Source: Salpingoeca rosetta
Taxonomy: Eukaryota > Protista > Choanoflagellata
Reading direction: 5' to 3'
DNA: 64,000 nucleotides
Assembly (NCBI GenBank): GCA_033442325.1
Contig: JAWQFM010000004.1
Coordinates: 2,111,844-2,175,843, forward strand
Positions 37,062 to 43,657 of this stretch are shown here, in pieces (the first letter of the stretch is position 1; the number at the start of each line of letters is the position of its first letter). A program made the position numbers and the translations under genes. Under the pieces are notes generated by a model. The model ran no database searches, was not told the DNA's origin, and saw only the letters and a program-made list of their open reading frames with translations.

Positions 37062-37463
37062 TCATGCGCTACTGCTGCTTTCGATGCTGTGCTGCTGCTC
37101 TTGGTGGTGCTTCTTGGCCAAGCGGATCAGCTTGTTGGCCTTGCCCATCGTCACGCCAGCATCCGTCAGCACTTGTACTGTCAGCATCTCGCCAACAACC
37201 AACTCAACCAAGTCATCGAGCGTGTCAATGTCGTGCTCAGCAAGGGCTGGTGCAACCTGCGGTAACAGCGAGTGGTGGTCGAGCCACGCTTGCAGCTTTG
37301 GCTCAAACGAAGAAACAGCGGTCGTTGTGGCCGTGCTGGAAGGCAGAACGGACGGTGACGATGACGACATGGGTGGTGCGGTTTGCGGCTGGCGTTGTTG
37401 ACAGCCATGGTTGCTGTTGCTGTTGCTGTTATGGTTGCTGTGATGATTGCTGCTGCTGTTATG

Positions 37464-37521
<58 letters not shown>

Positions 37522-39927
37522 TTGCTGCTGCTGTTGCATGCGGCAACAGCTTTACGCACACGCTCTGCGATTCTTGACGCATCCATTGCTCGGTCAACCT
37601 CGTACTGGAAGGATGTGATCCCATCCATGTCAAACAGCGACAGCACCACTTCGCGCACAGTCTTGTGCTGCTGTGGTGGCGGCAGGTGCAGCACCCGTGC
37701 AAAGTACTGGTCCAGCGCTGCTATGATCTTTCTGTTCACCACATCTGGCAGTGTCATTGCCAGCCGCTTCATGCGGTCAAACGAATCGTACTCGCTCGCC
37801 GACGCCACACTCAAGGAGTGGCTGTTGCTGTCGTGCCAGCCACTGCCGAGGAAGAGTGGAATGATGCGGCAAAGACGGATCTTGTGTGGGTGCTCGTGAG
37901 CCAGCTGCTGCAGCTCAAGCACTGCCATCCACTCCAACAGCACGTTGTCGCATTTGTCAAGATGATCAAGTGAGCGCATCTTGTGGATTGCAGCAACAGA
38001 GACGACGGGGCAGGTGACAGTGCTGTTTTGCAGGGCTGTCATGCATGCACGCTTGAAGTTGACGCCGGTCTCCAAATTGTTGGTGTCCACAAAGGTCACC
38101 AAGCCATGGCGCTCCAACTTTGGGTGCAATGTCATCACCAAACCTCGGTTGCCGCGTTGCCTGTGACGTGGTGGTGAATGTCGAAATCAGAAAGGAAGAG
38201 AGCGGGAAGCAAAGACACTCAGTTCGCACCGTACACTCATGCACACACACATGTCCTACCTGTAGCTGATGAAGACGTCGTACTCGTTCTGAAGACCGAG
38301 AACGGGCAGGAGGGGGCCATACTTGGCGACCAGATCCCCTGGTGACAGCAGCTGTGAGCGGCCAACGCGAAGCGCTTTCTTGTTCATGTGGTGGGTGTGC
38401 ACGTCCTCGAAGAACAGCAGTCTGGTGTCATTGAATGGCAGCAACAACGTGGCCTTGAGCTCGGGGTAGCGCTGCGTGACAGCTGTTGTGATGGTGTCGT
38501 ACAGCATGTGCAGTAGCGTGCGAGGACGTGCAGTCATGATCTTGATCTTGATGCCACCAACAGCGGGCACAAGTTGCAGCTCTATCTCCGCCACGTCCGA
38601 GAAGATCACGGCGTGCGTGCGGCTCAACATGGGTAATTCGGTTGCACCGTATTGCATGTGTGCCAACACGCATGCCAGAACCATCGGGAACAGGCCCTCT
38701 GGCAGGAACGACGCGTGCTGTGCATCCTCAACTCGTACGCTTGCTCCCTTCTTGAACTCATTCAAGCTGAAAGCCATGTAGGTTGTCTTCTCCTCGTGCC
38801 CAACATATGGGTTGACCTGCTGCGCTGCTGTCGTACTCAGCGACACGGATGCGATCGTGCTGCTGCGGTGCCGGATCGTCATCGGCAGGATGGCTGGAAC
38901 CAGGTACTGCTGCTGGTGGTGGTGTGTGTCATCGCTGTCGCCCATATCCTCATTGTCATTGGCAGAGTTCGCACGTGCAAACGCTATGTGACTGTCAATC
39001 AGCTTGGGTGGAGAGTAGTGGACGCACAGCCCGTACTGCATCATGAGGCGAAGGAACGGCATCACTAAGTTGCTGTCCACGTCTCTCCACAACACATCAA
39101 GTAGACGACGGTGCAAAATCCCCCCATGAATCAGATCTTTCCAAAGCTGTACATGCACACCCCTCGCCTCTTGGTCTCTCAGGTCCGCGTGCAGGTCAAA
39201 GTTGCGCATGACGCGCGTCATCGTGTCCACCGCCCACTGCGGACTCAGGATCACATAATCCTCCATGCCTGGCACGTGGTCGTAGTACAACACCATTGAG
39301 TACAGGTGCAGGAACTGGAGGCACGCCCTTGTTTTGTCACGTGTGCGTAGCCCACACGTGCGCGCAATATCCACCACCTCGTCAAACGTGAGCAGCGGTC
39401 GCTTTTCGTCGCGGGCAATGGTGTTGAGCTTGTCGAAGAGGTGGAGGTATGGCACAGCCACTTCCTGGCTCACGTACTCCTGTGCCAGTGCTGTGGAGGA
39501 GATGGTCTGGCGCAGGTCCTGGATCATGGGGTCGTGGATGGACTTGGTGTTGTCGACGGGCCAGAACCACAGCTTGTGGTTGCTGTTGTACACAACAGAA
39601 GCAAATGAAGGGTGTCTGCTGATAAGCTGGAACACGTCGTGTGATATGGTCTCGTGCTGCTTCCGCTCGGTGATCTTGTCAGCAAAGGTGCCGATGATGA
39701 GGACGGGTGCACCCTTGGCGTGGAGGTGGAGGGAGGAGAGCCAATATTCAATAAACTCCCACGTCTCTGTCCGCTTGCTCTCATCTTGATACAGCACGTC
39801 CTCCATCGAGAATACCAGCAGATACACCGCGTACCTGGTGTGAGGGATGTGGGATGTGGGGGAAGGTGAGGGCGGGCTGAGTGGGTGAAGGAAAGTATGT
39901 TGGTGGAGGGCAGCGGTGGACAGCACG

Positions 39928-39978
<51 letters not shown>

Positions 39979-41256
39979 CACATGCACAACGCACACTCAC
40001 ACACATAGTACATGCAAATACATCACGCTTACTCTGTGAGGAAGAAAGGGTGGAAAATGTAGAAGGTGGACTGGCCGCCCAGATCAACCACCTTGAATGT
40101 CACACGCAATTTGCCCTCGCCCATGGTCGTGTCCAGGTTGAGGTCCTTGATCGCCTTCTCAATGTCCTCAGCGGAGACACGAAGTTGAGAAGTGCTGGCC
40201 CTTCTTGAATGTACTACGCTGTGCTGCTGCTGTTGCTGTTGCTGAACCTGCTTTGACAGTTTGGGTGACGACGAAGAGTGGTGTTCGTCGCCTTCGGTGG
40301 AGGTGCATGCTGGCTGTGTCTTCGTTGACATGGATGGGGGAGGGCCATGCTGTGGCTTCTTGCTGTCTTCAGCGTCATCGTCCTCCGCCAGCTGTTGTTG
40401 TTGCTGCTCAACTCGGCGTTGATGCTCCTTCATCGCCGCTGTCACCGCCTCCTTCATCGCTGCGCCCATCTGAGTTGCCCTTGCCAGTGCCGTGCCCAGC
40501 AGCGTGCGCATGTACTCGCTTATGTCACCCGCAACGTGCTGTTGTGATGCGATGGCATGCAGGGATTGGTGTAAGATGACATGGACCAGAGTGCTTGCCT
40601 GCAGGCAAGGGAGAAGTCGCGATTCCTACACACACACACAGACACACACAGACACACACAGACACACACACATACACACAGACACACACAGACACACACA
40701 GACACACACACATACACACACACCTGCCAGTTGCAGACGTCCATGGATTCGATGATGACAGACAGATCCATGCTGTTGGCGCCAAAGGTGGAGGGCTCGT
40801 CCTTGTTGAACTCATCGCCCATTAGGGAGTGCAAGGTGGTGGTCTTGCCAGCACGCCCTTCACCAACCAGCATCAGCTTGGCACGCCCTGCCATCTGCGT
40901 GTCTGAGTGCTGTGCAATCTGGTGCATCGCCGCCATCACCTCACGGTTGCGCTCGTGTTGAGGTTGAGCCTGTGAACGGCGGTGGGCGTGGTGGGAATGA
41001 CCAATGAGATGAAGAAAAGCAAGGGGGCAAGGAGTGGCATTTGGGTAGTGGTTGACGTTGTTGGGCACTCACGTCTGCAGGTTGGTGGTATGGTGCTGCT
41101 AGGTTGGAGGCAGTCGCTTCGGCATGCGGCATCGCCGCCAGCGCTGTGGTGGGCTGCAAGAAGAAGTGTGAGTGGCACTTGACGCATGCCAGCACGACGA
41201 ACAGACGTGCAGTCTCTTAACAGCAAAGCACAGAACCACACAATCACAGACAGACA

Positions 41257-43141: not shown

Positions 43142-43189
<48 letters not shown>

Positions 43190-43228
43190 GCATACTAGAC
43201 ATACACGCACGCATACTAGACATACACA

Positions 43229-43260
<32 letters not shown>

Positions 43261-43657
43261 GCACACACAATGAGATACCATGCCGTGTTGTCGATGGATG
43301 TTGGCGCCCTGCTGCACCAGGAACTTCACAACATCGACGTGCCCGTGTCGGCTTGCACGATGGAGCGGCAAGTCCCCCTGCTCAAGACGCACGCCGGCAA
43401 TGTGCCGTTGTTCGATAGCGCACGTGAGTTGTGATGTGATCGCAAAGTTTGCCGTAGCCTCGTTGCCTCAACACCCTTGGTTCGGTCCTGCTCGTCCAGC
43501 TTCCTAGTCCAGCAAGAAAGCGCACCATTTTGTCCGACGCATCCCGCTCCTTGTTGATATCCGGCTTTGCGCCCCCTTTTGCTGGATCACCCTCCAACAG
43601 CAACCGCTTCACACGGTCCAGATCTCCCTTCTCGCAAGCCTCAATGAGCGCACTCAT
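37062..43657 (-). CDS. Roco protein: ankyrin repeats + Roc GTPase + COR + TIR + C-terminal SAM-like domain
   Basis: About 8 ankyrin repeats (TPLYxAS..GH). Roc motifs G1 [15 protein letters not shown]3 VVDLGGQ and G4-like IIGTFAD. COR segment [13 protein letters not shown]...VILSPQW. TIR segment YDVFISYR|...[14 protein letters not shown]...[11 protein letters not shown]-like tail [10 protein letters not shown]...[12 protein letters not shown]. Confidence 0.9.

What the first reader, a model, noticed from the sequence alone, without database searches (positions are those of the whole stretch)
37062..43657. Ankyrin-Roc-COR-TIR-SAM protein: candidate GTPase-gated TIR NADase immune receptor
Seen: ankyrin array, Roc GTPase motifs, COR, a TIR domain (YDVFISYR...CDNVLLEW) with Glu at 37932-37934, an Asn/Ser linker and a SAM-like C-terminus. 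Established: Roco proteins are GTP-regulated dimerising switches; SARM1, plant and bacterial TIRs hydrolyse NAD+ through a Glu in the alphaC helix and need oligomerisation, which SAM domains supply in SARM1. Inference: a sensor-switch-effector receptor in a unicellular relative of animals, with TIR+SAM where LRRK-type Rocos carry a kinase.
Basis: partly seen in the sequence, partly recalled or inferred. Interest (0 to 1): 0.85.

Follow-up and report, generated by a model that had tools for sequence, protein, structure and literature searches.

The report
Choanoflagellate ankyrin-Roco GTPase with TIR enzyme
This is an intact but unannotated 12-exon gene of the choanoflagellate Salpingoeca rosetta that joins ankyrin repeats, a Roc-COR GTPase switch, an enzyme-type TIR domain and a small SAM-like tail. 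It is one of about 35-40 sister genes, and a 2026 preprint already showed that one sister's TIR domain makes cyclic ADP-ribose.

Summary
On the minus strand, 37062-43657, canonical GT-AG splicing joins 12 exons into an open frame of about 1407 aa. It carries eight ankyrin repeats, a Roc domain, COR-A/COR-B, a TIR domain split by a 99-nt intron, an Asn/Ser linker and a five-helix SAM-like tail. The Glu codon is at 37932-37934 as stated.

The genome is Salpingoeca rosetta. No public protein I retrieved matches this copy, but at least 35-40 paralogous loci exist and 29 are annotated.

The TIR call is solid: profile hits to Roq1 (1e-9) and SARM1 (4e-8), and fold matches of Z 13.8 (RPV1) and 11.2 (SARM1).

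The Glu lies in a near-invariant DNVLLEW motif. A 2026 preprint shows that the TIR of paralog F2UB80 (about 71% identical, same Glu, E1118) makes cADPR.

The SAM call holds only at fold level. GTPase gating and an immune role remain inference. Expression and splicing of this copy were not shown, because the RNA reads were patchy and partly came from a truncated sister copy.

ROCO-TIR fusions are already reported in molluscs, a red alga and a flatworm. This scan had already flagged sister genes in the same genome.

Verdict: a new member of a known kind.

The parts
43526..43657 (-). Exon 1: start codon (43655-43657) and N-terminal ankyrin-like cap ([24 protein letters not shown]...)
   Evidence: Open frame and GT donor. 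The N-terminus is nearly identical to annotated paralog P0164.
41818..43377 (-). Exons 2-6: five 99-nt phase-0 exons, one ankyrin repeat each (43279-43377, 42947-43045, 42502-42600, 42173-42271, 41818-41916)
   Evidence: GT-AG enumeration, exon lengths and phases, Pfam Ank E 1e-8 to 5e-8.
41367..41667 (-). Exons 7-8 (41575-41667, 41367-41444): the last two ankyrin repeats
40724..40969 (-). Exon 9: first part of Roc, with P-loop GEGRAGKT and switch I
   Evidence: Pfam Roc 31.2 bits, above the 27 cut-off. 89-91% identical to paralogs P0003 and P0165.
40033..40538 (-). Exon 10: family-wide insert of about 160 aa in Roc (a helical part, then a Q/S-rich part), followed by G3 motif DLGGQ. The acceptor at 40538 was chosen from the paralog alignment; 40598 and 40625 are also possible in frame.
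   Evidence: Pfam gives a weak Roc match on the end of this exon.
38260..39834 (-). Exon 11: rest of Roc (about 39450-39834), COR-A (38895-39449), COR-B (38427-38720) and TIR strand betaA, YDVFISYR (38260-38282)
   Evidence: Pfam COR-A 64.8 bits, COR-B 19.9 bits. Donor AG|GTAGGA at 38260/38259.
38161..38259 (-). 99-nt intron that splits the TIR domain after betaA
   Evidence: The only in-frame, stop-free GT..AG solution. No RNA joint was seen.
37524..38160 (-). Exon 12, TIR part (alphaA to alphaE)
   Evidence: Pfam TIR_2 27.6 bits. Profile hits in the PDB: Roq1 1e-9, SARM1 4e-8. AF2 pLDDT 81.9. VIA Z 13.8 to RPV1 and 11.2 to SARM1.
37932..37934 (-). Candidate catalytic Glu codon (the E of DNVLLEW)
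   Evidence: Nearly invariant in alignment A1. Equivalent to E1118 of F2UB80, the residue the preprint names as catalytic.
37302..37523 (-). Asn/Ser/His-rich low-complexity linker, encoded by an AGC/AAC microsatellite-like tract
   Evidence: Translation. AF2 pLDDT falls below 50 where it begins.
37065..37301 (-). SAM-like five-helix C-terminal domain; stop codon at 37062-37064
   Evidence: AF2 pLDDT 84.7 with five helices. The top hits of the wide VIA search are almost all SAM domains, Z 6-7.9. Conserved in 18 of 29 annotated paralogs. Pfam SAM_2 gives only 14 bits.

Best explanation
The locus is an intact member of a large Salpingoeca rosetta family of kinase-less Roco proteins. The likely working model has four parts.
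- The ankyrin array, which is LRR plus ankyrin in many sisters, binds a ligand or partner, or holds the protein in an inhibited state.
- Roc-COR acts as a nucleotide-dependent dimerising switch.
- The C-terminal TIR domain is an NAD+-processing enzyme. Its active site needs TIR-TIR assembly, and its product, by analogy with the tested sister, is cyclic ADP-ribose rather than bulk NAD+ depletion.
- The SAM-like tail may help self-association or partner recruitment.

Shown here: the gene structure, the domain folds, the conserved GTPase and TIR motifs, and the family size. Shown elsewhere, for a sister about 71% identical in the TIR: cADPR production by the isolated TIR domain. Inferred: GTP control of the TIR, oligomerisation, sensing through the repeats, and an immune or conflict role.
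For: - Twelve exons with canonical splice sites give an open frame without stops.
- Roc, COR-A and Ank pass Pfam cut-offs; TIR_2 misses by 0.4 bits on a piece that lacks betaA.
- GEGRAGKT and DLGGQ are intact. Of 29 annotated paralogs, 26 keep a P-loop, 28 keep DxxGQ and 24 keep DNVLLEW.
- The TIR profile hits enzyme-type TIRs best: Roq1 1e-9, L6 2e-8, SARM1 4e-8, AbTIR 3e-5. Adaptor-type TIRs score E above 0.1.
- The predicted fold matches RPV1 and RUN1 at Z 13.6-13.8 (rmsd about 3, about 150 residues) and SARM1 at Z 11.2 (rmsd 2.7, 131 of 140 residues).
- Preprint 10.64898/2026.04.20.719644, Table S4 row 33: F2UB80 TIR 1034-1255, catalytic residue 1118, active, cADPR yes. I checked that F2UB80 is P0158 and that E1118 is the LLEW Glu. 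The window TIR is about 71% identical to it.
- Receptor-like family features: at least 40 Roc-COR loci and at least 35 TIR exons in the genome; variable LRR/Ank N-termini; one sister with a PNP_UDP_1 C-terminus; one ankyrin repeat per phase-0 exon.
Against: - Nothing has been tested on this copy or on any full-length family member.
- No public protein retrieved here matches this gene.
- Three RNA-seq runs gave no depth over 40440-43039 and no splice joints. Reads on the rest were 95-99% alike and mostly partial. On exon 12, 9 of 13 variant letters match a truncated sister copy.
- SAM membership fails at sequence level.
- The tested sister TIR showed no recorded NAD+ depletion, so a cell-death or NAD-depletion role is not implied.
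- Some TIRs with the Glu in place are inactive, as the same preprint notes.
Confidence: 0.6

Rival explanations
1. Same biochemistry but not immunity. The family would be GTPase-regulated cADPR synthases that feed calcium or other second-messenger signalling for environmental sensing or cell-state switching, for example the responses to bacterial cues that S. rosetta is known for.
For: The tested sister TIR made canonical cADPR with no NAD+ depletion recorded. Animal Roco proteins such as LRRK and DAPK are general signalling proteins. There are no infection-response data for this family.
Against: The family has 35-40 copies, variable repeat arrays, cassette exons and swapped C-terminal modules. 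That pattern is more typical of receptor repertoires under conflict than of housekeeping signalling.
Confidence: 0.2
2. This particular copy is a silent or decaying recent paralog whose open frame has simply not yet been disrupted.
For: It was absent from the public protein set I retrieved. It had near-zero RNA depth on its copy-specific exons in three runs. A neighbouring partial duplicate, 210 kb away, is truncated and frameshifted.
Against: About 4.2 kb of coding sequence across 12 exons has no stop. All 11 introns are GT-AG, and the P-loop, DxxGQ and TIR Glu are intact. In run X15 most reads at the discriminating sites 37782 and 37785 carry this copy's letters, not the twin's. Dips in depth can also come from the read filter.
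Confidence: 0.12
3. The TIR is a non-enzymatic scaffold, as in MyD88 or TLR adaptors, that recruits other TIR proteins after Roco activation.
For: S. rosetta has other TIR proteins. Animal TIRs classically act as adaptors.
Against: The family profile scores adaptor-type TIRs far worse than enzyme-type TIRs. The Glu motif is near-invariant. A sister TIR is catalytically active.
Confidence: 0.05

Closest known systems
S. rosetta F2UB80 / PTSG_12359 (P0158) and its annotated sisters (PTSG_03350, PTSG_13160, PTSG_03500 and others)
   Same: Same family. It shares the Roc insert, COR, the TIR with DNVLLEW and the SAM-like tail. The TIR is about 71% identical. The F2UB80 TIR makes cADPR (preprint 10.64898/2026.04.20.719644).
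   Different: This copy is not among the public proteins I retrieved. It has an ankyrin-only N-terminus with no LRR_6 exons in the window and a longer Asn/Ser linker.
SARM1 (ARM-SAM-SAM-TIR NAD+ hydrolase)
   Same: Enzyme-type TIR fold (Z 11.2). HMMER coordinates place the Glu at the E642 position: profile positions 7-81 match residues 563-634, and an ungapped extension brings profile position 89 to residue 642 (the SARM1 construct sequence is). A SAM-fold module sits in the same protein.
   Different: Not an orthologue. The order is reversed (TIR then SAM-like), there is one divergent SAM-like domain instead of two canonical ones, there is no ARM domain, and the regulator is a Roc-COR GTPase. 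The sister's product is cADPR with no NAD+ depletion recorded.
Plant TIR-NB-LRR receptors (RPV1/RUN1, RPP1, Roq1, L6)
   Same: These are the best structural and profile matches for the TIR. They share the sensor-repeat, NTPase-switch and TIR logic, and they form large variable families.
   Different: The switch is a Ras-like Roc-COR, not a STAND NB-ARC. The TIR is C-terminal, not N-terminal. The sensor candidates are ankyrin or LRR_6 repeats.
Roco proteins LRRK1/2 and DAPK1
   Same: Roc-COR tandem with N-terminal ankyrin or LRR repeats. The output domain lies C-terminal of COR. DAPK1 ends in a death domain, another innate-immunity module.
   Different: No kinase domain, although UniProt's automatic name calls the sisters 'non-specific serine/threonine protein kinase'. 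There is an insert of about 160 aa inside Roc, and a TIR plus SAM-like output.
ROCO-TIR fusions reported elsewhere
   Same: Roc-COR and TIR occur in one protein in Aplysia TLR- and MyD88-like proteins (PMC9334734), as TPR-ROCO-TIR in the red alga Chondrus (PMC11378527) and as LRR-NTPase-COR-TIR in Macrostomum (preprint table). Brown-algal LRR-ROCOs have one repeat per exon and were proposed as immune receptors (PMC11378527).
   Different: The flanking domains and lineages differ. The Macrostomum TIRs have Tyr at the catalytic position. None is described as a family of 35-40 genes with a SAM-like tail.

Membership tests
Roco (Roc-COR) GTPases | Ras-like Roc G domain with a P-loop and DxxG | tested here: met
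   Pfam Roc 31.2 bits, above the 27 cut-off. GEGRAGKT and DLGGQ are present.
Roco (Roc-COR) GTPases | COR domain directly C-terminal of Roc | tested here: met
   COR-A 64.8 bits, above 35.3. COR-B 19.9 bits, E 7e-4, below the 27 cut-off.
Roco (Roc-COR) GTPases | GTP binding or hydrolysis and COR-mediated dimerisation | not testable with these tools
   Needs biochemistry.
TIR domain superfamily | Flavodoxin-like TIR fold | tested here: met
   AF2 pLDDT 81.9. The top 33 Foldseek hits are all TIRs. VIA Z 13.8, 149 residues aligned. Profile E 1e-9. Pfam TIR_2 27.6 bits against a cut-off of 28.
Enzymatic (NAD+-processing) TIRs | Glu at the catalytic position at the start of alphaC | tested here: met
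   The Glu codon is at 37932-37934 and is near-invariant. It is homologous to E1118 of F2UB80, the residue named as catalytic in the preprint. HMMER coordinates place it at SARM1 E642.
Enzymatic (NAD+-processing) TIRs | Glu-dependent NAD+ turnover | not testable with these tools
   Reported only for the sister TIR, F2UB80.
SAM domain (Pfam SAM_1/SAM_2) | Significant sequence match to a SAM profile | tested here: not met
   SAM_2 14 bits, E 0.058, cut-off 20.5. The family profile found no SAM in the PDB.
SAM domain (Pfam SAM_1/SAM_2) | Five-helix SAM fold | tested here: inconclusive
   AF2 gives five helices at pLDDT 84.7. About 30 of the top 36 chains in the wide VIA search are SAM domains, at Z 6-7.9 and rmsd about 2. 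Z stays under 8, and NusA-AR2 and Rad51-N (HhH)2 domains score alongside them.
SARM1 orthologue | ARM, then SAM-SAM, then TIR, in that order | tested here: not met
   No ARM domain; the order is TIR then SAM-like; Roc-COR lies upstream.
STAND NLR immune receptors | NB-ARC or NACHT NTPase | tested here: not met
   No such Pfam hit on any exon piece or on the sisters. The NTPase is Roc.

The most novel reading that the evidence does not exclude
The S. rosetta Ank/LRR-Roc-COR-TIR-SAM-like genes form a true innate-immune receptor repertoire built on a Roco switch instead of a STAND NTPase. Ligand binding by shuffled cassette-exon repeats would flip Roc-COR, assemble the TIRs and release cADPR as an alarm signal. 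That would be a third TIR-receptor design, beside TLRs and NLRs, present in the closest relatives of animals and in other protists.
Probability: 0.3. Interest if true: 0.8.

Novelty: new member of a known kind. Interest (0 to 1): 0.42.

Why it matters
If Roc-COR really gates a signal-making TIR, this family would show how a small-GTPase switch can replace the STAND ATPase of plant and animal NLRs. It would also provide a tractable system for asking what TIR enzymes did before animal immunity arose, because S. rosetta can be gene-edited. For this locus alone the value is mainly in annotation. It is an intact family member missing from the public protein set I retrieved, and it has a truncated TIR-only sister nearby.

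Tried and rejected
- RNA evidence. The single read-laying run showed no splice joints, no depth over 40440-43039 and mostly partial reads 95-99% alike. I showed that 9 of 13 variant letters on exon 12 come from the truncated twin. The data therefore neither confirm nor refute splicing or expression. The tool skipped the repeats at 37457-37542, 39917-39985 and 40620-40730.
- Single-sequence search of exon 12 against the PDB: only low-complexity hits.
- Truncated TIR profile against the PDB, meant to print the SARM1 alignment around the Glu: no hits. The equivalence to E642 therefore rests on HMMER coordinates and on the preprint's own residue assignment.
- SAM-like profile against the PDB: nothing relevant.
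- Complex prediction on two copies of the SAM-like tail: no verdict. This is not evidence for or against self-association.
- Search for an annotated protein of this exact gene: none found. The best sisters are 56-72% identical over exons 11-12.
- Search for LRR exons upstream of the start: none in the window.
- First choice of the exon 10 acceptor (40598) rejected in favour of 40538 after aligning the paralogs.
- The full-length spliced protein could not be given to the search or folding tools, so all domain tests were run on exon pieces or on sister proteins.
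Full report
**What is there**

The region 37062-43657 holds a multi-exon gene on the minus strand. The introns are rich in (GT)n/(CA)n repeats. I enumerated every in-frame, stop-free GT..AG join between conserved peptide anchors. The one ambiguous acceptor was settled by aligning annotated paralogs. The resulting model has 12 exons and about 1407 aa. An in-frame alternative acceptor at 40598 would give 1427 aa.

- Exon 1: 43526-43657. It starts at the ATG at 43655-43657, and its first 40 residues almost equal the N-terminus of paralog P0164.
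- Exons 2-6: five 99-nt phase-0 exons, each encoding one ankyrin repeat.
- Exons 7-8: two more ankyrin repeats.
- Exon 9: 40724-40969, with the Roc P-loop GEGRAGKT.
- Exon 10: 40033-40538. It encodes an insert of about 160 aa that all family members share, then DLGGQ.
- Exon 11: 38260-39834. It holds the rest of Roc, COR-A, COR-B and the first TIR strand, YDVFISYR.
- Exon 12: 37065-38160. It follows a 99-nt intron and holds the rest of the TIR, an Asn/Ser/His-rich linker and a tail of about 75 residues. The stop is at 37062-37064.

**Domain tests on this sequence**

Pfam on the exon pieces:

| Domain | Score | Cut-off |
|---|---|---|
| Ank | E 1e-8 to 5e-8 | passes |
| Roc | 31.2 bits | 27 |
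| COR-A | 64.8 bits | 35.3 |
| COR-B | 19.9 bits | 27 |
| TIR_2 | 27.6 bits (piece lacks betaA) | 28 |
| SAM_2 | 14 bits | 20.5 |

A 30-sequence alignment of the TIR region (A1) was searched as a profile against PDB sequences. The best hits were Roq1 (1e-9), AT1G72930, L6, SARM1 (4e-8), AbTIR, TcpB and RUN1. Adaptor-type TIRs such as TLR6 and SIGIRR scored only E above 0.1.

AlphaFold2 on the window's own TIR piece gave pLDDT 81.9. In Foldseek the first 33 hits are all TIR domains. VIA-align gives Z 13.8 to RPV1 (rmsd 2.9, 149 residues), 13.7 to RUN1, and 11.2 to SARM1 (rmsd 2.7, 131 of 140 residues). SPARTA and AbTir TIRs follow at about Z 10.5-11.

**The Glu**

In A1 this Glu is nearly invariant and the following Trp is invariant, down to relatives at 26-34% identity.

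HMMER aligned profile positions 7-81 to SARM1 residues 563-634. An ungapped continuation puts the family Glu (profile position 89) on E642. That fits the motif DCKDWVHKE in the SARM1 construct printed in the preprint's table. This step is an extrapolation, not a printed alignment.

**Organism and family**

The closest proteins are all from Salpingoeca rosetta (PTSG_ loci). The genome is 55.4 Mb in 68 contigs. None of 31 retrieved proteins matches this gene: identity over exons 11-12 is 56-72%. This copy therefore appears unannotated in the public set I could reach.

Six-frame searches of the genome find at least 35 TIR exons, most followed by a SAM-like exon, and at least 40 Roc-COR loci.

The annotated sisters carry LRR_6 and/or Ank, then Roc, COR-A and TIR_2. 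One sister, P0002, has a degenerate TIR followed by a PNP_UDP_1 domain. Of 29 annotated members, 26 keep a P-loop, 28 keep DxxGQ, 26 keep betaA, 24 keep DNVLLEW and 18 keep the SAM-like motif.

Roc-COR-TIR relatives also occur in other choanoflagellates (S. infusionum, Mylnosiga, Didymoeca, Barroeca, Hartaetosiga). They also occur in MMETSP and EukProt protist transcriptomes and in environmental contigs.

**Experimental evidence from the literature**

Preprint 10.64898/2026.04.20.719644 tested eukaryotic TIRs in E. coli. Its text lists S. rosetta among the non-animal species with cADPR-producing TIRs. It states that activity depended on the catalytic glutamate in all cases.

Table S4 row 33 reads: F2UB80, 1352 aa, TIR 1034-1255, catalytic residue 1118, active yes, cADPR yes. 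There is no entry for NAD+ depletion. I confirmed that P0158 is that protein and that E1118 is the Glu of DNVLLEW. The window's TIR is about 71% identical to it.

Row 34 is a Guillardia TIR of the same subfamily (motif HVLMEW). It is also active and does deplete NAD+.

ROCO-TIR combinations have been noted in three other lineages:
- Aplysia (PMC9334734)
- Chondrus, as TPR-ROCO-TIR (PMC11378527)
- Macrostomum

Brown-algal LRR-ROCO genes with one repeat per exon were proposed as immune receptors. Richter et al. 2018 (PMC6040629) noted Ank-TIR proteins in choanoflagellates but did not mention Roc-COR. A search for Salpingoeca together with ROCO terms listed no paper on this family among its top hits.

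**The C-terminal tail**

The tail is conserved among sisters at a mean of 50% column identity. AlphaFold2 predicts five helices at pLDDT 84.7. A search of 48,161 representative chains that does not rely on Foldseek lists SAM domains almost exclusively at the top. These include Sans, CASKIN2, p73, EphA5, tankyrase, ASK3, SARM1 SAM and BICC1, at Z 6-7.9 and rmsd about 2 over 60-70 residues.

Z stays below 8, however, and (HhH)2 modules such as NusA-AR2 and Rad51-N score similarly. Sequence-level tests fail. I therefore call it SAM-like at fold level only.

**Expression**

The first mates lie almost only on the plus strand. In most stranded libraries that means RNA from the minus strand, which agrees with the gene's orientation.

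Coverage was patchy, though. It was zero over 40440-43039, 63% of laid reads ran on into unlike sequence, and no joint was reported at any predicted intron.

A partial sister copy about 210 kb away on the same contig (G000:C4, about 2,360,600-2,362,100) has the following structure:
- It keeps only the last 22 codons of exon 11 plus exon 12, at 94-95% DNA identity.
- It lies next to a tRNA-Lys gene.
- A frameshift in its Asn/Ser linker puts the TIR and the SAM-like parts in different frames.

Nine of the 13 listed variant letters on exon 12 are that twin's letters, so part of the signal comes from the twin. In run X15, 19 and 16 of 20 reads at the discriminating sites 37782 and 37785 carry this gene's letters. 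That hints that its last exon is transcribed. Four variant sites (37659, 37671, 38126, 38145) match neither copy. Expression and splicing of this copy remain unproven.

**Interpretation**

The architecture and the catalytic competence of the TIR are well supported. The sensor-switch-effector mechanism and the immune role are plausible but inferred. They rest on family size, variable repeat arrays, cassette exons, swapped C-terminal modules, and analogy to NLRs and to the brown-algal ROCOs.

The sister's product, cADPR with no NAD+ depletion recorded, points to signal production rather than NAD+ exhaustion. This scan has already reported sister genes in the same genome with the same reading. 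I reached the preprint independently before seeing those notes.

**Verdict**

This is a real, intact and correctly described gene. It is a new member of a family that is already known and partly characterised. It is moderately interesting as part of that family and ordinary as a single locus.

Noticed in passing
window 35862-35937 (-), 36620-36695 (-), 43923-43998 (+): Three tRNA-Lys(CTT) genes bracket the gene. One lies 266 nt upstream of the start codon and two lie downstream of the stop. Copies of the same tRNA also flank the truncated twin.
   Followed up: partly
G000:C4 about 2,360,600-2,362,100 (L013:8116-9609, + strand): A truncated sister copy keeps only the last 22 codons of exon 11, a longer intron (268 nt) and exon 12, at 94-95% DNA identity. 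A frameshift in its Asn/Ser microsatellite puts the TIR and SAM-like parts in different frames. No Ank, Roc or COR lies in the 8 kb upstream. RNA reads carry its private letters, so it seems to be transcribed.
   Followed up: partly
window 37659, 37671, 38126, 38145 and many sites in 38338-40074: RNA reads show letters that match neither this gene nor the twin, often in nearly all reads at a site. These could come from a third close copy, from gene-converted stretches of other paralogs, or from a strain difference between the assembly and the RNA cultures.
   Followed up: no
window 40033-40538 (exon 10) and the paralogs: All family members carry an insert of about 160 aa inside the Roc G domain, between switch I and the DxxGQ motif. 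It has a conserved helical start ([15 protein letters not shown]...AAMKEHQQR), a variable Q/S/D-rich middle and a conserved end ([14 protein letters not shown]).
   Followed up: no
window exons 9-12 against paralogs P0003, P0165 and P0001: Similarity is mosaic. Exon 9 is 89-91% identical to P0003 and P0165, but exons 11-12 are only about 66-67% identical to them, and other loci are the best matches there (79%). This suggests exon-scale gene conversion or shuffling within the family.
   Followed up: no
protein P0002 (PTSG_02681): One sister has Roc-COR, a degenerate TIR-like stretch (SELLLEW) and then a PNP_UDP_1 phosphorylase-superfamily domain. This looks like an effector swap at the C-terminus.
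   Followed up: no
UniRef names of P0001, P0003, P0005 and most sisters: The automatic name 'non-specific serine/threonine protein kinase' is given to proteins with no kinase domain on record. It was probably transferred from LRRK-type Rocos.
   Followed up: no
window 41818-43377: Five consecutive 99-nt phase-0 exons each encode exactly one ankyrin repeat, as a separate note of this scan also says. Any of them could be skipped or duplicated without breaking the frame.
   Followed up: partly
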